A DNA stretch of 64,000 bases, from NCBI GenBank assembly GCA_907165135.1, contig OU015566.1:2604001-2668000 (forward strand), written 5' to 3'. A program made the position numbers and the translations under genes. The notes below the pieces were generated by a model. The model was not told the DNA's origin and did no database searches. It saw only the letters and a list, made by a program, of their open reading frames with translations. The DNA comes from Oikopleura dioica. Taxonomy: Eukaryota; Animalia; Chordata. This document shows, one piece after another, positions 3,475-24,759 of this stretch (the first letter of the stretch is position 1; every line of letters begins with the position of its first letter).

Positions 3475-4380
3475 ATGAAACTTTTCGCTGCAACTTTGGC
3501 CATCGCCTCCGCTCAGGACTTTGCTGCTTCCGAAGCTGGAGATGATGCACGAACCTTCTCCTTCGGGGATTCTGCTTTCGACTACGGAGAAAGTGCTTAC
3601 GCCGGATTCGATAGCGGAGCCTTCTACGACTCAGCCTACGGCAGCGATTACAACTCTCTTTCTGCTGCTTACAACTACGACGACGCCGACGCTGCCGCCG
3701 CTGACGCTGATGCCGCTGTCGCCGACGAGGCGGGACGAGACAAAGACGAAGCTCGATACTTCGGAGTTGTGCAGGCCACCACTACGTCGCCGACCACTCA
3801 GACTTTCACCACCACTTCCAGAATCACTAAACACTGCATCAAGTGCGACGTTATGACCCCAGCAAAGTGCGCCGTTGTTGGTCAAACCAACGATGAGGTC
3901 AACCAGCCATGCGAAAATGGCGAGGTTTGCTTCCTCGAAGTCCGACGAAGTCATCAAGCTGATAAGTTGACCCAGATCTGCACTGGCTGCAAGAACGCTC
4001 AAGCTTGCTGGGACCTCAAGCAACAGAACTCGATCACAGGAGCTAAAGCTTTAAGAAACCTCGCACAGTGTCATCAGATGCACACCAGCGGCAACCGAAT
4101 CCCACGACTTGGCTCGATCGCTTCCGTTTGCCGAACTTGCTTTGCCCCTTCAACTTCTGCTTACGCCTCCACCTCCGATGCTAACAAGCCAAATCAATTC
4201 TTCGCTGGTAACTCCGACGGAAACTCATTCACCATTCCCAACGGCAGCGGTGTTTCGGCAACTGTGACGCTTTACGGAAGCAATGATGCCACATTCAACG
4301 ACATCTGGTTCACCAACCGACACGGACTCTCTTCTACATCCAGCTACGATCTTGACTTCTCTCTTCCTATTCTCTCATAA
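3475..4380 (+). CDS. Intronless secreted protein: signal peptide, Asp/Ala/Tyr-rich linker, Thr run, Cys-rich domain (oikosin-like)
   Basis: 301-aa ORF MKLFAATLAIASAQ...; Cys domain CIKC...C...C...CFLEVRR...ICTGCK...AC...QC...VCRTCF. Confidence 0.85.
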   Translation: MKLFAATLAIASAQDFAASEAGDDARTFSFGDSAFDYGESAYAGFDSGAFYDSAYGSDYNSLSAAYNYDDADAAAADADAAVADEAGRDKDEARYFGVVQATTTSPTTQTFTTTSRITKHCIKCDVMTPAKCAVVGQTNDEVNQPCENGEVCFLEVRRSHQADKLTQICTGCKNAQACWDLKQQNSITGAKALRNLAQCHQMHTSGNRIPRLGSIASVCRTCFAPSTSAYASTSDANKPNQFFAGNSDGNSFTIPNGSGVSATVTLYGSNDATFNDIWFTNRHGLSSTSSYDLDFSLPILS

Positions 4381-4903
4381 TTATTCATTTCGTGAATAAT
4401 TTTACGAAAAAATTGGCTCGGCAAAATGATTCTGTACTCCTTATTTTCCTTATTTCTGGTGATATCTTAAAAAAAATAAAACAATCTCGCATATTTAAAA
4501 AAATGATATTTGTTTCTTTAGGGTGTTTTCAGTAAGGGAGTTATTGTATTTCTTCGCGTAAATTCAAAGATAAAGAGCAAATTTAGCATTAAAATATTTT
4601 CCTGCAAATTTAAAAAAATAAGCCATAGCCTGTGTCCCATAGGGGTTTATGATACAGATTCTAGTTAAATCGGCAAAAGAAATATTTTGGAATTGACCAA
4701 GCCACAAAAAATCACAACAAGAATTTAAAATGATTTGACATTTTTCAAAAAAAAACGAAAAAGGATAAATCTGAAATAAAAATTTCGAAAATTGTGTGTA
4801 CCCGGGTTATCCCAAGAGAATTTCATAGCTTGTTTTTGGCGATTTCAAAATATCAGCTTTTCTTTCGTTCGAATCTCTGAATTATCTTGATAAAAAGAGA
4901 AAA

Positions 4904-6190
4904 ATGGAAAGTTCTGTCAAAGACTTTGTTTTTATTTTGATATTTTGTTTCGTCGTTTTATGGGCAAACACTTTGAACCTGCCGCAAGATAAAGCTGAGA
5001 ATTTCATTGCACCCTTTTTTCAAACTCAAGAATCGGATACGGAAGATGTGATCAACTTTCCGGTAGATGAAGCGACTAAAGAAAGCAGAATTTTCAAAAC
5101 CTTTGTGAAGAAAAGAAAACACATCAATTTCGTCTGCGAGCGATTGAGACAAATTATAAATCTGTATCAGGACAAATCCGCGACTTCTTTGAAACTCATG
5201 AAATACCAGAAAAATATAAATAATTTCGGAAAAGACTATATTCCATGCAAGCCAATTACCCATCCGCTTGGATTGCCTGACAATCTCTTCAAAAACGAAA
5301 GTAAGCGCAACGTCGCAAAGTCGAGATAATTACTAATTGACCTGTTTTAGAGTATAAATTAAGAACATGTCTTCCGACCAAAACCGGAAGCACTAGCTGG
5401 CTTAAAGCGCTTAGCTCTCTTAAATTTTCTGATGGAATGTGGAGTCCCAATGTTATTGAGCATGGATCACTAAAATTGAGATAAGAGTCCTCTTCTTAAA
5501 ATAAGAAAAAAATGCCAAAAAAAATATAATTTAAGAAAAACATAAAATCTGACCCGCTTTTCTAAGCTGTAATTGAAGATCCATGAAAAAGATAACGAGT
5601 GGTCATATCCAGAAAAAATGCATCGAAACGCATGGTTACTTGACGCTGATGACAGTACGTCATCCGATGGCGAGGCTCTATTCAGCGTGGAAGGATAAAT
5701 TTCGAAAAGGTCATGCATATCTTGGGACGATCGAAAATCAGTTCAAGTAGTATTTGACCAAGTTCGAGCGCCAAAACATGGAAAACTCGACCTATCAATA
5801 CTCGTTTGAAGCTTTCGTCGAAACTGTCGCTCTTTCCGATTTCGATGGACAAAGAGACCGCCACTGGCAGTCAATTCACACCTACTGCAATCCGTGCGCC
5901 ATCCCTTACGAATTCATTATAAAACAAGAATATGCCTCTGAAGAAAACGACTTTGCTTTGCGCGTGTTTGACTGAGAAGACAGATTTCAAAATCTTAAGA
6001 GCATTCCACAAATATCTTCGTGGGGCCGAGAGATGAAAAATAAGCCGATCGATGTAGACGAGATGCTTGAACACTGGAGAAATGTGAGCAAAAGAACAAT
6101 AAGAAGGATTTATAAATTATTTTTCATGGATTTCGTTTATTTTGACTACAGAATCGAGAAGTTCATTGCCGCTGGAAAAAATGGTTTAGT
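4904..6190 (+). CDS. Golgi carbohydrate sulfotransferase (Sulfotransfer_2 / CHST8-14-like) with two in-frame stops (possible pseudogene)
   Basis: N-terminal TM anchor; 5'-PSB CLPTKTGSTSW (~5368-5400); 3'-PSB VRHPMARLYSAWKDKF; DRHWQSIHTYCNPC; C-terminal YKLFFMDFVYFDY. TAG at 5748-5750 and TGA at 5973-5975 lie in the same frame. The 3' end may extend to ~6590. Confidence 0.8.
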
Positions 6191-20663: not shown

Positions 20664-21634
20664 ATGTCTTTGATAATGAGGCCGACAAGGCCAGAGTCAG
20701 GGTATGAAAGCGTTGAAAATGGCGTCGCCAAGAACTGGGACGTCGATACCGGTAAAAAGAACGAAGAAGAAAGAGAAACGATATCTACCGCGAACGAGAG
20801 TGGCTCGACTAGCTCAAACCAGCCGCGCTCTCTCCTCGAAGCGTTAGAAATTCTAAAAGAAACAGAGGAGGAGAAGAAAGCACGGCTTGACATGGAAGAA
20901 AAAGTCAAAAACATGCTGGAGAACCTACCCTTTTATGTCAAACGCGTTGTCAGAACTCCTGTCAAGCCTCTAGGTAAGCTACTTTCAATTGAATCTTTCC
21001 TGTTGAATAGTAGGGAAGCTCTTAACCTAGGTTAAGAGTGCACTAGAGTGCTCTAGGAAAGATGAAATATTGAATGCCCCCAAGATCATATTTCAGACAA
21101 AAGTCTTCACTGCAAAGACTGCGATGTTTGGGTCAACTCTCCTACCCAGATGGAACAGCATCTCGGCTCGCTGCGCCATAAAAACACAGTCGCAGGGATT
21201 CCAGTACCTCCTCGTATAGATAAAATCGAGCCTGTCAAGCCGAAGTCAATCTACCAGTACAAATGCGAGCTGTGCCACAATACGCTCAACTCGGAAGTGC
21301 AGCTTTATCAGCACTTGTGCAGCCAAAGACATTTAGCGGCTCTAGAGGGTAAACCACCAAAACGCAGATGGGTTCCGTATGAGCAATTCCGGGCGCATAA
21401 AATAATCCAAGCCAGACTCGTAAGTGTCCACCTCTCAAGACCACAGGGCTTATTCCATAAATTCAGAGACAGCAGTCTGCATACACCGTCGCTTACCAGC
21501 CGATTCTCATGCCCAACTTTACGAACTTGCAGATAGGCCAACTCGGGCAGTTGCAACAGGGAGCGATGCAAAATGTCCAAAACGTACCCCAATTGTCCTT
21601 ACCCCCTGGAATGCCGTTCGATCAGTTTATGTAA
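20664..21634 (+). CDS. Matrin/U1-type C2H2 zinc-finger protein (ZNF385/ZMAT-like)
   Basis: CKDCDVWVNSPTQMEQHLGSLRHK and CELCHNTLNSEVQLYQHLCSQRH fingers; Gln-rich C-terminal exon ending ...PGMPFDQFM* at 21634. Confidence 0.85.
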
Positions 21635-21966: not shown

Positions 21967-22445
21967 ATGCGTTTTGGCATTTCCCTTCGGAATTACTCGA
22001 TCCGACTCGACCCAAGAAAATTCAAAATTGCAGAAAAATCAGCTGCTGGAGAACTCTCCATCGTTTCCAAAATTGATCTGGGCGTTCAAGCCAGCATTCC
22101 CTACCAAATCAAGATGACCGGCGAGAATGGGAAGCCGTTTTACTTTGCTGGGCAGATTCACGCTGTTTCGAAGAAAAATCTCGTCGGAATCGCGGGAGAA
22201 ATCGACGAAGGGAGCGAAACGGGGTTTATTTATGATGAAAAGAATGAAGATCATTTGGGCGATCTTTTCAACAAGGTAAGTTCTTCTGAGTGGCTGGAAT
22301 TGAAGTTATTATTTAGGATGATCTTTCGAAAAATGTATTCGGCTGCGAAACCGCCTTCAAAGAAGTAGAATACGATCTCGTTTTCGATGGTTCCTCTGAA
22401 AAAGCTGTTATTCACTCAATTGAGGGTCAAATTCAACTGACATAA
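21967..22445 (+). CDS. Small putative mitochondrial cold-shock/OB-fold-like protein, paralog 1
   Basis: Arg/Ser-rich acid-free N-terminus MRFGISLRNYSIRL; ...GFIYDEK...; intron after NK (22277); last exon ...KEVEYDLVFDGSSEKAVIHSIEGQIQLT*. Confidence 0.6.
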
Positions 22446-22480
22446 AATTCCGTCTTCCGTTTTGATTGTTTATCCTGAAG

Positions 22481-23403
22481 CTAGGTTCAACAAATCGAAA
22501 TCCGATGCCCGGAAAACCCGATATCGGATCGGATATTTATCGGGTTTTGTCGGGTTTTTTTTCACCCTACAAAACCCGATCCTGAAAATTTCAAACAACC
22601 CGACGTAGGATCGGGTTTTTGTCGGATTTTGTCGGAATTTCGTCGGGTTTTTCTTGCCTTTTCAGCCAATCACAGTCGGTCTAAATAGCCTCCCTTGCCC
22701 TTTTTTACTCAAAAAGCACTCGAAATAGATGAGTACTGCCTCCAAAACCGAATAAAGGCATAGAACGAGCTCTAGAGGACATTTACATTAATCTTACCAA
22801 AGATAATCTTCTGGCGATTGAGAGAATGAAATTCAGCGAGGTCCCTGGCAATCAGCGATCCATTTCGAGGGCAGAATTTCAGAGAACGCCTGAGCTTGAA
22901 GGCCTTAGCAGAACAGTCTTTTAGGTTAACGCCCACTATTTTCAACCCCATGGGTTATTTAAAGTCATGTGACCTCGGCAAGGCCTAACCCCCTAAACTG
23001 CAACTCAGCAAGGTCCAAGCTTTCTAAACATATAAAGAGGGTTTGGATTATTTATTCTATATTCTACCGTATTACTAATAATACGGTTTTAGACGAGGCG
23101 TTTTTATTGTATAAGGAGATGCACAATGGGAAAATGCACATTCTAAATAATATTATTAATGATCCTCGAAAATTGCTGAAAAAATCTGCTCAAGATAAGT
23201 TATTGACCTTCTTTTGACTTGATTTTTTTTTATTTTTGCTTGTAGGAAACCCGACAAAAATCCAACAAAAACCCGATAAAAACCCGATTTCGGACCCGAC
23301 AAAAACCCGATAAAATCCAACAAAACCCGATCCAACAAAACCCGACCTCCTAAAAAACCCGATAAAACCCGATCTTGGTTTCGGGCGATTTTGTTGAACC
23401 TAG
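22481..23403. mobile_element. Non-autonomous DNA transposon (hAT-like) with subterminal AAAACCCGA arrays
   Basis: TIR CTAGGTTCAACAAA(A)TCG; 8-bp flanks TCCTGAAG (22473-80) and TGCTGAAG (23404-11); many AAAACCCGA(T/C) or TCGGGTTTT copies near both ends. Confidence 0.85.
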
Positions 23404-23427
23404 TGCTGAAGGAAAGCTGTTTGTAGA

Positions 23428-24057
23428 ATGAGCATATTGCGAGCAACCAGATTTTTGACGAGGAGAAGCTCTTCGTTCATCCTCGGCGAGCTGAAAAACG
23501 GCGAAATTGTCGAAGCAAAATTGCCGAATGTTCCTCATTTGTCTCTTAATTTCCCAGGTACAGTTTTCTCTGTATCTTTGCTCGGTTTCATGTGTACAAA
23601 ACCTGAATCAGGACATTTTAATAAAAGGTGCATGGCGCTCTTTCAAGACCCTGACTCAGGTTTTGTACACAGAAAGTAGGAGCTCTGAGTCAGAGCCTCT
23701 GACTGCAAGGAATCGTGTTAACCTTGTTTCTAGTTGAGCTCGAAGGAGAGGGAGAAGCCTGGCTACTTGGGAAGACCTTTCCAATTTTGGCGGAAGATGT
23801 AATGGGAACAATTATTGAAACGCCGACACAAGGACCTGGCTTGATAAAAGTAGAAAATGATGAACACGATGATACAGTTTTCTTCATGGTAAGAAAAGTA
23901 ATCGTTTCTCAAGTGCTTACCATGTGTGTAGCAAGATGTCCCGCTGTATCTCCGCCCAGAAGAAGTAGAAAGCCTGGCAGGAGCGAAAGTAAAATTCGAC
24001 CTCGTGAAGACACGAAAATCAACGAAAGCTTTTATTACAGATATTGTTTTGCCCTGA
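23428..24057 (+). CDS. Small putative mitochondrial cold-shock/OB-fold-like protein, paralog 2
   Basis: Spliced: MSILRATRFLTRRSSSFILGELKNGEIVEAKLP...GPGLIKVENDEHDDTVFFMQDVP...GAKVKFDLVKTRKSTKAFITDIVLP*; three GT-AG introns. Confidence 0.65.
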
Positions 24058-24107
24058 TCCCTCGATATCCCTATCAAACTTCTCTTTGACGTCAACCTTT
24101 CTATAGA

Positions 24108-24726
24108 ATGCTGGCTCGTGCTTCAAAACAGCTTCTTAGGACGAGAATAAGCTCGAATTATGTTCTCGCTCGAGTCGTTGATGGAGAACTTCAGGAAGCA
24201 AAGATTGATTTGACCAAGACTTCATCAACAAAAGATACTCGGGAGAGCTACGGATTCCAGGGCTCCATTTGGGCAGAAGTGAACGTCAATAACTCTGAAA
24301 TGTTCGCTCAAGTTGGCGAAGTCTTCTCAAAAGAAGCTAGTGGCCGGTTAGGTAAATAGACAACTTTTATGGACTGAACCCGACACAAATGTTGTTTTCA
24401 GGCAAAATTGTGTCAGACAAAAACGGAGAAAGCTGTATTCATCCCCTTGACGTCCCTATTGAAGAGCAAAAAGTGATAGAATTCGACTTGGCCGATGTTA
24501 ACGAAGAGCAACTTGTTCGAACTAAAAACACTCGCTACCAATTCGACACTGTCAAGGACCAGGATGGATTTATCAGAGCCGTTAATATTCATCGACTACG
24601 TAGGAGAATCATTTTTCTTCTCTTTCATCATCACTTTTTCTAGCGAAATCGCAGCTCAAGAAGTTAAACGCGGCTTGGGACGAAACTCAGGAAGAAAATC
24701 TAATTTCTTTGTACAGTTATTCTTAA
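24108..24726 (+). CDS. Small putative mitochondrial cold-shock/OB-fold-like protein, paralog 3
   Basis: MLARASKQLLRTRISSNYVLARVVDGELQEAKID...RYQFDTVKDQDGFIRAVNIHRL...; starts 50 nt after the paralog 2 stop, with TAG|A directly before the ATG. Confidence 0.65.
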
Positions 24727-24759
24727 CTTTTATTAAAATAAAGAGCTCAAATGAACAAA

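What the first reader, a model, noticed from the sequence alone, without database searches (positions are those of the whole stretch)
21967..24726. Operon-like trio of divergent paralogs: putative mitochondrial cold-shock/OB-fold proteins
Seen: three small same-strand genes each begin with an Arg/Ser-rich acid-free presequence-like segment. They share a motif (ILGELKNGEIVEAKL / VLARVVDGELQEAKI / KSAAGELSIVSKI) and end in a CSD-like strand pattern (KVKFDLV...AFITDI / RYQFDTV...RAVNI / EVEYDLV...AVIHSI). Genes 2 and 3 are 50 nt apart, with an AG acceptor 1 nt before each ATG, as in SL trans-spliced operons. Inference: an undescribed lineage-specific family of mitochondrial nucleic-acid-binding proteins. 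Oikopleura mitochondrial genes carry poly-T tracts that are shortened in mRNA by unknown machinery, which makes such proteins worth testing, but that link is speculation.
Basis: partly seen in the sequence, partly recalled or inferred. Interest (0 to 1): 0.75.

Follow-up and report, generated by a model that had tools for sequence, protein, structure and literature searches.

The report
Divergent cold-shock-domain gene operon, Oikopleura
Three small neighbouring genes of the tunicate Oikopleura dioica are real, expressed paralogues of a previously undescribed appendicularian-only family: a mitochondrial-type leader, a small beta module and a very divergent cold-shock (RNA-binding type) domain, encoded in a spliced-leader operon; they are candidate organellar RNA-handling proteins, but location and RNA binding are still untested.

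Summary
The window is O. dioica OKI2018_I69 chr1. The three genes are chr1.g647, g648 and g649 (145, 136 and 174 aa).

- **Expression.** A marine metatranscriptome confirms the g1 intron and both g3 introns. Twelve of 13 differences listed in g3 fall at third codon positions.
- **Paralogy.** All three are paralogues: g2/g3 give z 7.5, and the g1 subfamily against the rest gives hhalign E 2.6e-9 over 126 columns.
- **Wider array.** The trio is the remnant of a larger array. The Bergen genome has seven same-strand paralogues 45-121 nt apart. OKI's 982-nt g1-g2 gap is a 923-bp MITE insertion.
- **Fold.** The C-terminal ~75 residues are a cold-shock domain. Family profiles hit only CSDs in the PDB (YB-1/YBX2, E 1e-4 to 7e-4) and canonical multi-CSD proteins among 1.84 billion sequences (E 4e-11). 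AF2 models match CSDs (Unr Z 11.3 for paralogue gX; Z about 7 for g1). Pfam's CSD model misses them, and the RNP aromatic residues are largely lost in g2 and g3.
- **Operon.** In a related appendicularian, RNA contigs start with the full 40-nt spliced leader joined one base before the ATG of homologous cistrons, and carry two or three paralogues each. No SL read was found for OKI g2 or g3.
- **Untested.** Mitochondrial targeting rests on leader features only. The link to mitochondrial poly-U excision is speculation.

The family is a new variant of a known kind.

The parts
21967..22275 (+). g1 (chr1.g647) exon 1. Codes the leader-like N-terminus (residues 1-14, acid-free), the N-terminal beta module and the first half of the CSD-like domain (from about residue 66 = nt 22162).
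   Evidence: P0001 100% identical; RNA contig 22108-22273 joined to 22315-22408
22317..22445 (+). g1 exon 2. Codes the last two CSD strands (EVEYDLV...KAVIHSI) and the stop codon.
22481..23403 (.). 923-bp non-autonomous transposon (MITE) inserted in the g1-g2 intercistronic spacer. It has 14-nt perfect terminal inverted repeats CTAGGTTCAACAAA/TTTGTTGAACCTAG, subterminal ATCGGGTTTT-type repeats, and flanking TCCTGAAG/TGCTGAAG that look like an 8-bp target duplication.
Evidence: The same spacer is 53 nt in Bergen (L002) and 51 nt in L001.
23428..23557 (+). g2 (chr1.g648) exon 1. Codes the leader-like segment (residues 1-20, acid-free) and the FILGELKNGEIVEAKL hairpin motif. An AG acceptor lies 1 nt before the ATG.
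   Evidence: (P0008)
23734..23888 (+). g2 exon 2. Codes the end of the N-module and CSD strands 1-3 (GTIIE, GLIKVE, TVFFM).
23932..24057 (+). g2 exon 3. Codes CSD strands 4-5 (KVKFDLV, KAFITDI) and the stop codon.
24058..24107 (+). 50-nt intercistronic spacer between g2 and g3. It ends in a pyrimidine-rich stretch followed by ATAG|A|ATG, the putative SL trans-splice acceptor.
   Evidence: The same AG|A|ATG architecture is seen joined to the SL in L003, L006 and L007.
24108..24351 (+). g3 (chr1.g649) exon 1. Codes the leader-like segment (residues 1-24, acid-free), the YVLARVVDGELQEAKI motif and the N-module.
   Evidence: RNA contig 24171-24349 joined to 24400-24599; P0019 = CAG5103168.1
24402..24599 (+). 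g3 exon 2. Codes the whole CSD-like domain (GKIVSD ... VIEFDL ... RYQFDTV ... IRAVNI).
24644..24726 (+). g3 exon 3. Codes a conserved C-terminal tail and the stop codon (TAA 24724-24726). An AATAAA lies at 24737-24742.
   Evidence: the loose end behind 24599 matches the start of exon 3, with about five differences in 30 letters by my own count; the tail is conserved in Bergen.

Best explanation
g1, g2 and g3 are three members of an appendicularian-restricted, fast-diverging family of small (115-190 aa) proteins.

**Architecture.** Each protein has three parts:
- a short, basic, acid-free, poorly conserved N-terminal leader of mitochondrial-presequence type;
- a roughly 45-residue beta-rich N-module that starts with a conserved (Y/F)(I/V)LA..GEL hairpin;
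- a C-terminal, highly divergent cold-shock domain (five-stranded OB barrel), related most closely to Y-box-type CSDs.

**Gene arrangement.** The genes sit head to tail in one transcription unit. That unit is resolved into single mRNAs by adding the 40-nt spliced leader at an AG placed 0-2 nt before each ATG. The ancestral array had up to seven paralogues (A0, A1, g1, g2, gX, gY, g3, as in Bergen). The Okinawa lineage keeps g1, g2 and g3 at this locus and has a MITE in the g1-g2 spacer.

**Most likely function (inferred, not shown).** After import into mitochondria and removal of the leader, the proteins act as single-stranded RNA binders or chaperones, or as CSD-shaped adaptor subunits working together, in organellar RNA metabolism.

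**Sub-claim odds.**
- real expressed paralogues: 0.97
- CSD homology and fold: 0.9
- SL-operon expression: 0.85
- mitochondrial location: about 0.55
- direct RNA binding by at least some members: about 0.5
For: **Identity and expression.** Searches identify the proteins. Spliced metatranscriptome contigs carry almost only third-position differences. Between OKI and Bergen, dN is 0.10-0.23 while pS is about 0.75-0.86, which is saturated.

**Family.**
- The Bergen locus L002 has seven same-strand paralogues with 45-121-nt gaps.
- The family alignment A5 is colinear from N- to C-terminus.
- hhalign of g1-likes against the others gives E 2.6e-9.

**CSD.**
- The C-terminal profile A4 hits YBX2/YB-1 CSDs over their whole length at E 1.1e-4 to 7e-4.
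- With the whole-family profile A5, all 25 PDB hits at E<=1 are CSDs.
- Profile A3 against 1.84e9 proteins finds canonical multi-CSD proteins: P0024 at E 3.7e-11, and P0031, P0032, P0035 and P0038. Pfam PF00313 confirms them as CSD proteins at E 1e-42 to 1e-59.
- The AF2 model of gX gives about 45 top Foldseek hits that are all CSDs (TM by target 0.72-0.80). VIA gives Unr CSD Z 11.3, rmsd 2.2 A over 77 residues, and the top 12 are all CSDs.
- The AF2 model of OKI g1 (pLDDT 68) matches the CSDs of RNase II/R, CRHSP-24 and Unr at Z 6.4-7.2.
- The nearest language-model neighbours of g2 are all S1/CSD-type clusters (a lead only).

**Operon and SL.**
- The SL sequence comes from PMC6883708.
- L006 and L007 start with the full SL, then A, then the ATG of the A0-like and A1-like cistron respectively. 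They run on through two more cistrons (L006) or one more (L007).
- L003 starts with the last 19 nt of the SL.
- L005 ends in poly(A).
- L001 is intron-less and spans the g1 end, g2 and gX.
- An AG lies 0-2 nt before the ATG in 10 of 13 family cistrons.

**Leader.**
- It is acid-free, with 3-5 Arg/Lys and a hydrophobic moment up to 0.8-0.97.
- AF2 models the first residues at low confidence (gX residues 1-67 and g1 residues 1-7 below pLDDT 50).
- It is far less conserved than the rest: g2 32% against 88% identity with a 6-residue indel, and g3 47% against 72%.
- I read R-x-Y|S/A motifs in g1 (RNY|S) and gX (RRY|A).
Against: - No localisation predictor or experiment was available. The leader of g1 is short (about 10-14 residues).
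- The Bergen A0 model lacks a leader.
- Pfam's CSD model does not recognise any member even at E<=1.
- The g1 subfamily profile alone finds no CSD, and the g1 structural matches are only Z about 7, in the range the tool calls middling.
- Of the four aromatic/His residues that contact RNA in YB-1 (W65, F74, F85, H87; named from my own knowledge), OKI g1 keeps two, g2 one or two, and g3 one. This is my reading. Canonical RNA binding by the OKI trio is therefore doubtful.
- SL junctions were not found for OKI g2 or g3. Two metagenome scans returned nothing, and the available RNA runs are from a too-divergent lineage.
- The N-module has only low to moderate model confidence.
Confidence: 0.6

Rival explanations
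1. Cytosolic or nuclear Y-box-like mRNP proteins, for example germline translational regulators. On this reading the basic N-terminus is not a targeting peptide but part of the protein's RNA- or partner-binding surface.
For: The closest solved relatives are the Y-box proteins YBX2 and YB-1. O. dioica operons are said to be enriched for housekeeping and germline genes (PMC11067885). No localisation test was possible.
Against: - The N-terminal segment is the least conserved part of each orthologue pair, yet keeps its acid-free basic character.
- The models give it low confidence.
- There is no Y-box-type charged C-terminal tail.
- Independent paralogues share only the physicochemical character of the leader.
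Confidence: 0.2
2. Pseudo-CSD structural subunits. The proteins would be imported into mitochondria but bind no RNA through the canonical face. They would serve as lineage-specific accretions of the mitoribosome or of another complex, possibly as hetero-oligomers of co-expressed paralogues.
For: - The RNP1/RNP2 aromatic residues are largely lost in g2 and g3.
- The best structural match of gX is a region of the Drosophila Unr CSD456 construct.
- The co-transcribed paralogue array keeps its order (A0-A1-g1) between very divergent lineages, even though operons are rarely conserved in this species complex (PMC11067885). This fits subunits needed together.
- OB proteins of mitoribosomes appear among the weaker fold matches.
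Against: - Several paralogues (gX, gY, A0, g1) keep the F74- and F85-equivalent aromatics, and gX also keeps Tyr/Trp at the W65 site.
- There is no evidence for any complex.
- Gene number varies between lineages (7 against 3 at this locus), which is unusual for fixed subunits.
Confidence: 0.15
3. The resemblance to CSDs is convergent or artefactual. On this reading the family is an orphan beta-rich fold with no relation to nucleic-acid-binding OB domains.
For: Pfam finds nothing. Model confidence is moderate (pLDDT 56 and 68). Foldseek E-values are only 1e-3 to 1e-2.
Against: Three independent lines agree:
- Profile-to-sequence hits go exclusively to CSDs and cover the full domain.
- Canonical CSD proteins score E 3.7e-11 among 1.84e9 proteins.
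- Fold matches are dominated by CSDs, with Z up to 11.3.
Confidence: 0.05

Closest known systems
Eukaryotic Y-box / cold-shock-domain proteins (YB-1, YBX2; Pfam PF00313)
   Same: Both have a five-stranded CSD barrel. The best sequence-profile hits cover the whole CSD (E about 1e-4). The G-x-(I/V) start of strand 1, the G-(F/Y/L)-I of strand 2, the F of strand 3, the V-x-(F/Y)-D-(L/I)-V of strand 4 and the (K/R)-A-(I/V) of strand 5 are all conserved.
   Different: - Members fall below Pfam's threshold (no hit at E<=1).
- The W65- and H87-equivalent residues are mostly lost.
- There is no charged C-terminal tail.
- There is an extra N-terminal beta module and a presequence-like leader.
- The genes are many small paralogues in an operon.
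[quoted passage not shown]
   Same: Both are small proteins with a CSD and, here by inference, a mitochondrial location. Both occur in organisms whose mitochondrial transcripts undergo removal of U tracts (O. dioica: PMC11384887).
   Different: - RBP16 has a canonical CSD plus an RGG domain, and no RGG is present here.
- No common descent beyond the CSD superfamily is shown.
- The editing link in Oikopleura is untested.
Non-canonical CSDs of Unr/CSDE1
   Same: The best structural match is 6y6e_A (Z 11.3). Both are CSD folds with a degenerate RNA-binding face.
   Different: Unr is a long cytosolic multi-CSD protein. The proteins here are single-CSD products of separate cistrons.
O. dioica SL trans-spliced operons (Ganot et al. 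2004; PMC7986045, PMC11067885)
   Same: Both have head-to-tail genes, intercistronic gaps of tens of nt, a single 40-nt SL added at an AG next to the ATG, and polycistronic RNA.
   Different: Typical O. dioica operons hold functionally unrelated genes and are rarely conserved between lineages. This one is an array of paralogues whose order is kept across deep divergence.
aIF5A/EF-P two-domain architecture (SH3-like N-domain plus CSD-like OB domain)
   Same: The whole g1 model's top Foldseek and Atlas rows are IF5A (E 7e-3; TM 0.42-0.44). Both have a small beta N-module followed by a CSD-like OB domain.
   Different: TM is below 0.5, rmsd is about 10 A over the whole chain, there is no hypusine-loop motif and no sequence signal. 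This is an architectural resemblance only.

Membership tests
Cold-shock domain (CSD, OB fold; Pfam PF00313) | Five-stranded antiparallel beta barrel of about 70 residues with CSD topology | tested here: met
   For the gX model, residues 68-149 give Unr CSD Z 11.3 (rmsd 2.2 A over 77 residues), and the top 12 VIA rows and about 45 Foldseek rows are all CSDs. For the OKI g1 model, residues 65-145 match CSDs at Z 6.4-7.2. g2 and g3 were not folded; they are assigned by alignment.
Cold-shock domain (CSD, OB fold; Pfam PF00313) | Match to the Pfam CSD model at its gathering score | tested here: not met
   No PF00313 hit at E<=10 for the OKI exon pieces, nor at E<=1 for P0014, P0022, P0036 and P0019.
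Cold-shock domain (CSD, OB fold; Pfam PF00313) | Significant sequence-profile relationship to bona fide CSDs | tested here: met
   A4 against the PDB hits YBX2/YB-1 at E 1.1e-4 to 7e-4 over the full domain. With A5, all 25 hits are CSDs. A3 against 1.84e9 proteins finds P0024 at E 3.7e-11 and four more Pfam-confirmed CSD proteins.
Cold-shock domain (CSD, OB fold; Pfam PF00313) | RNP1 (K/R-G-F/Y-G-F-I) and RNP2 (V-F-V-H-F) aromatic nucleic-acid-binding motifs | tested here: not met
   This is my reading, at the sites aligned to YB-1 W65/F74/F85/H87 (residue names from my own knowledge). OKI g1 has E/F/F/K, g2 has E/L/F/M and g3 has S/C/F/-. gX has Y(W)/Y/F/A and so keeps most of them. The motifs are degenerate in the trio.
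Cold-shock domain (CSD, OB fold; Pfam PF00313) | Binding of single-stranded RNA or DNA | not testable with these tools
   Needs recombinant protein and binding assays.
Y-box proteins | CSD followed by a long C-terminal tail of alternating basic and acidic islands | tested here: not met
   The proteins end 0-27 residues after the CSD.
O. dioica SL-resolved operon | Same-strand genes with short intercistronic distance (<=60 nt strict, <=500 nt permissive) | tested here: met
   g2-g3 is 50 nt. g1-g2 is 982 nt in OKI and fails both limits, but it is 53 nt in Bergen, and the excess is a MITE. The limits come from PMC7986045 and PMC11067885.
O. dioica SL-resolved operon | Transcripts carrying the 40-nt SL at an acceptor just upstream of the ATG of each cistron | tested here: inconclusive
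   This is shown for homologous A0-like and A1-like cistrons of a related appendicularian (L003, L006, L007). For OKI g2 and g3 only the AG|A|ATG acceptor is seen. Two SL-junction scans found nothing, and the raw-read runs were too divergent.
O. dioica SL-resolved operon | Polycistronic RNA spanning neighbouring cistrons | tested here: met
   L001 is intron-less and spans the g1 end, g2 and gX. L006 holds three cistrons behind one SL. L005 holds two cistrons plus poly(A). Caveat: these are assembled contigs from other lineages.
Mitochondrial matrix proteins with a cleavable presequence | N-terminal 10-60 residues rich in Arg/Ser/Leu, free of acidic residues, able to form an amphipathic helix | tested here: met
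   The first acidic residue is at position 12-27 in 11 of 12 sequences. There are 3-5 Arg/Lys and the hydrophobic moment reaches 0.97. The segment evolves fast but keeps its character.
Mitochondrial matrix proteins with a cleavable presequence | Positive call by a trained predictor, or experimental import and processing | not testable with these tools
   TargetP and MitoFates are not available, and no proteome data were found.
RBP16-like mitochondrial editing accessory factors | CSD plus a C-terminal RGG domain; guide-RNA oligo(U) binding | tested here: not met
   No RGG region is present in any member. Binding is not testable here.

The most novel reading that the evidence does not exclude
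The family is part of the still unknown machinery that recognises and trims the long poly-U tracts of appendicularian mitochondrial transcripts down to six U. On this reading the CSD paralogues, made together from one operon, coat or measure the U tracts. This would be an animal counterpart of the CSD protein RBP16 in trypanosome U-deletion editing.
Probability: 0.1. Interest if true: 0.9.

Novelty: new variant of a known kind. Interest (0 to 1): 0.6.

Why it matters
Three reasons:

- **A CSD lineage that standard annotation misses.** Both O. dioica annotations list these proteins as unnamed, and Pfam finds nothing. The domain is joined to an uncharacterised N-module and a mitochondrial-type leader.
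- **Concrete candidates for an open problem.** O. dioica mitochondrial transcripts lose long poly-U tracts by enzymes that are 'still unknown' (PMC11384887), and most mitochondrial tRNA punctuation is gone. A lineage-restricted, organelle-directed family with an RNA-binding fold gives a small set of testable candidates.
- **An unusual operon.** It is made of paralogues and keeps its gene order across very divergent lineages, in a genome known for scrambling its operons. That points to selection for co-expression.

Tried and rejected
- **Pfam on all eight exon pieces and on full-length members.** No usable hit.
- **Raw RNA reads.** Three oligo-dT runs carry the same species label (X6-X8). Only a 40-nt patch of the upstream gene mapped, at 90-95% identity, so these runs come from another cryptic lineage. 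They say nothing about SL use or transcript ends here.
- **Metagenome scans for SL junctions.** Scans for SL+g3 and SL+g2 junctions gave 0 hits each.
- **First tool alignment of exon fragments (A1).** It misplaced several C-terminal pieces onto the N-terminal hairpin and was discarded. A2 still misplaced part of gY exon 2. A3 was used.
- **g1 subfamily profile alone against the PDB.** No CSD hit.
- **P0018 contig look-up.** Not on record.
- **A0, A1, gX and gY orthologues in the 64-kb window.** tblastn found none.
- **A secretory signal peptide.** Rejected, because Arg residues are spread through the N-terminus and there is no uninterrupted hydrophobic core.
- **Bacterial Csp acquired by transfer, as reported for Styela clava (PMC7540406).** Not favoured, because Y-box CSDs score better than bacterial Csps. 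Not formally tested.

Full report
**What is there.** The region holds three same-strand spliced genes with canonical GT..AG introns:
- g1: 21967-22275 + 22317-22445 (145 aa)
- g2: 23428-23557 + 23734-23888 + 23932-24057 (136 aa)
- g3: 24108-24351 + 24402-24599 + 24644-24726 (174 aa)

Searching single exons by reference returned proteins identical to these models: Oikopleura dioica OKI2018_I69 chr1.g647.t1 (P0001), g648.t1 (P0008) and g649.t1 (P0019, CAG5103168.1). The window is therefore Okinawa-lineage O. dioica chromosome 1.

**Expression and constraint.** The three raw-read RNA runs labelled with the species are from a divergent cryptic lineage. Only a 40-nt conserved patch of the upstream gene mapped, so they carry no information here. 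A marine metatranscriptome (X1) holds contigs about 96% identical to the window that splice out the g1 intron and g3 intron 1. One continues past 24599 with letters that match the start of g3 exon 3. Twelve of the 13 differences listed in g3 are at third codon positions. Between the Okinawa and Bergen orthologues, synonymous sites are saturated (pS 0.75-0.86) while dN is 0.10-0.23. These are selected coding genes.

**Are they paralogues?** Pairwise, g2/g3 are clearly related (z 7.5, 0 of 500 shuffles). g1/g2 is marginal (z 3.1) and g1/g3 is not significant. More sequences settled the question. The Bergen genome locus (L002, FN653028.1) carries seven same-strand small genes in a row, which I call A0, A1, g1, g2, gX, gY and g3. 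The gaps between them are 61, 80, 53, 44, 114 and 120 nt by my gene models. All seven align colinearly. A profile of g1-like proteins against a profile of the other paralogues gives hhalign probability 96% and E 2.6e-9 over 126 columns, that is, over the whole length. The trio is real, but it is the remnant of a larger array. A0, A1, gX and gY have no counterpart in this 64-kb window.

**The g1-g2 gap.** In Okinawa it is 982 nt. In Bergen it is 53 nt, and in the RNA contig L001 it is 51 nt. The excess is a 923-bp element with perfect 14-nt terminal inverted repeats (22481-22494 and 23390-23403), subterminal repeats and a likely 8-bp target duplication. Removing it restores a spacer of about 50-60 nt.

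**Fold and homology.** Pfam finds nothing in the exon pieces or the full proteins. The reverse direction is clear:
- A profile of the C-terminal ~80 residues of g1, g2, gX and A0 hits Y-box CSDs (YBX2, YB-1) across the entire domain at E 1.1e-4 to 7e-4. The rest of the hit list is almost entirely bacterial Csps and Unr.
- With the 21-sequence whole-family profile, all 25 PDB hits at E<=1 are CSDs.
- The exhaustive search of 1.84 billion representatives with profile A3 found 27 proteins at E<=1e-3. These are family members from O. dioica and unnamed marine contigs, canonical multi-CSD proteins (P0024 at E 3.7e-11, P0031, P0032, P0035, P0038), and one 1237-aa protein (P0028) in which Pfam finds no CSD. 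Pfam confirms the five as CSD proteins at E 1e-42 to 1e-59.

AlphaFold2 on gX (P0014) gives a disordered or uncertain N-half and a five-stranded C-terminal barrel with pLDDT about 58-83. Its Foldseek list is almost purely CSDs (YB-1, CspA/B/E, CRHSP-24, Unr; TM by target 0.72-0.80). The Foldseek-independent search gives Unr CSD Z 11.3 (rmsd 2.2 A over 77 residues) and CSDs in the top 12 rows.

The Okinawa g1 model (pLDDT 68) is all-beta. Residues 65-145 match the CSDs of RNase II/R, CRHSP-24 and Unr at Z 6.4-7.2, which is weaker but consistent. They are assigned through the alignment and, weakly, through language-model neighbours that are all S1/CSD-type.

**What is not CSD-like.** Four YB-1 residues stack on RNA: W65, F74, F85 and H87 (names from my own knowledge). 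Of these, the family consensus keeps the F74 and F85 equivalents. gX also has Tyr/Trp at the W65 site. OKI g1 keeps two, g2 one or two, and g3 one (my reading). The fold is a CSD, but canonical RNA binding by the Okinawa trio is not assured.

**N-terminal parts.** Ahead of the CSD lies a module of about 45 residues. It starts with the conserved (Y/F)(I/V)LA..GEL hairpin and is predicted as four strands at low to moderate confidence. The whole g1 model weakly resembles the two-domain aIF5A arrangement (Foldseek E 7e-3, TM about 0.4), which I treat as an architectural echo only.

The first 11-26 residues of every paralogue except the Bergen A0 model are acid-free, hold 3-5 Arg/Lys and can form an amphipathic helix. 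The models give the extreme N-terminus low confidence: gX residues 1-67 and g1 residues 1-7 are below pLDDT 50. This segment evolves much faster than the rest while keeping its character: in g2, 32% against 88% identity with a 6-residue indel. That is the behaviour of a mitochondrial presequence. No predictor or experiment was available, so location remains an inference.

**Operon and spliced leader.** The SL sequence was taken from PMC6883708. Four RNA-derived contigs from a related appendicularian carry homologous cistrons; its g1-like protein is about 32% identical to g1.
- L006 begins with an adaptor remnant, then the full 40-nt SL, then A, then the ATG of an A0-like gene. It continues through an A1-like and a g1-like gene.
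- L007 begins with the same full SL joined one base before the ATG of the A1-like gene, at the site that reads AAG|A|ATG inside L006.
- L003 starts with the last 19 nt of the SL.
- L005 ends in poly(A) after the g1-like gene.
- L001, from a lineage close to Bergen, is intron-less and spans the last codons of g1, then g2 and gX.

For Okinawa g2 and g3 themselves only the acceptor sequence is seen, and two junction scans found nothing. The order A0-A1-g1 is kept between very divergent lineages, although O. dioica operons are reported to be rarely conserved (PMC11067885).

**Interpretation.** The best-supported reading is an appendicularian-restricted family of divergent CSD proteins, expressed from an SL operon and probably imported into mitochondria. 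There they would bind single-stranded RNA or serve as CSD-shaped subunits in RNA metabolism. The rivals are a cytosolic Y-box-like role, a non-binding structural role such as mitoribosome accretion, and a chance resemblance, which three independent lines now make unlikely.

The editing idea has a real precedent: T. brucei RBP16 is a mitochondrial Y-box protein needed for U-indel editing (PMC10270622). It also addresses a real gap: the enzymes that excise the O. dioica poly-U tracts are unknown (PMC11384887). Nothing here tests it, and I give it about 10%.

**Novelty.** No paper found links Oikopleura to CSD proteins of this kind, and both genome annotations leave the proteins unnamed. The domain itself is a known kind. 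The new elements are the architecture (leader + N-module + degenerate CSD), the restriction to appendicularians, and the conserved paralogue operon.

Noticed in passing
window 22481-23403: A 923-bp MITE-like element with perfect 14-nt terminal inverted repeats, many ATCGGGTTTT-type subterminal repeats and a probable 8-bp target duplication. It sits exactly in the g1-g2 intercistronic spacer. Related copies are transcribed elsewhere: X1 contig 2 and reads from X6-X8 match only its ends.
   Followed up: partly
L002 3805-8166 (Bergen FN653028.1): A seven-gene array of paralogues (A0, A1, g1, g2, gX, gY, g3). Bergen g1 (4912-5386) and A1 (4259-4831) are not among the genes called at this locus in the collection's table. 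Four of the seven have no counterpart in the Okinawa window.
   Followed up: partly
L002 7218-7309 and 6372-6645: gY has a GC..AG intron of 92 nt, which is needed to reach the annotated 142-aa product. Intron 2 of gX is 274 nt, far longer than its neighbours (35-47 nt), and may hold an insertion.
   Followed up: no
window 21548-21587: This is the only patch where RNA reads from runs labelled with the same species map (90-95% identity, loose ends on both sides). It is a conserved stretch of the upstream Gln-rich gene. It shows how far the cryptic O. dioica lineages have diverged at the DNA level.
   Followed up: no
L006 1-49, L007 1-49: The JGI metatranscriptome contigs start with ACATGGGG, which looks like a template-switch adaptor remnant, directly followed by the complete 40-nt SL. 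The SL 5' end seen here is therefore the cap-proximal end of the mRNA.
   Followed up: no
P0028 (1237 aa): A long protein hit by the family profile (E 8e-8, three stretches) in which Pfam finds no CSD. Its origin and nature are unknown.
   Followed up: no
model mecf40e794050 (OKI g1): The whole-chain top matches are archaeal IF5A (an SH3-like domain plus a CSD-like OB domain), at low TM (about 0.4). The fold of the N-module remains unassigned.
   Followed up: partly
L004 5836-6785 (ENA metagenome contig): A single gX-like gene with a much longer intron (about 200 nt) next to a KIN17 gene. It probably comes from a less compact appendicularian genome. No array of paralogues is seen there.
   Followed up: no
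same genome, another piece (note s1-350421): An earlier unchecked note reports a DIS3L2/RNase II-type exonuclease with a possible mitochondrial presequence. From my own knowledge, DIS3L2 enzymes prefer oligo-U 3' ends. If it is real, it would be a natural partner to test alongside this CSD family.
   Followed up: no
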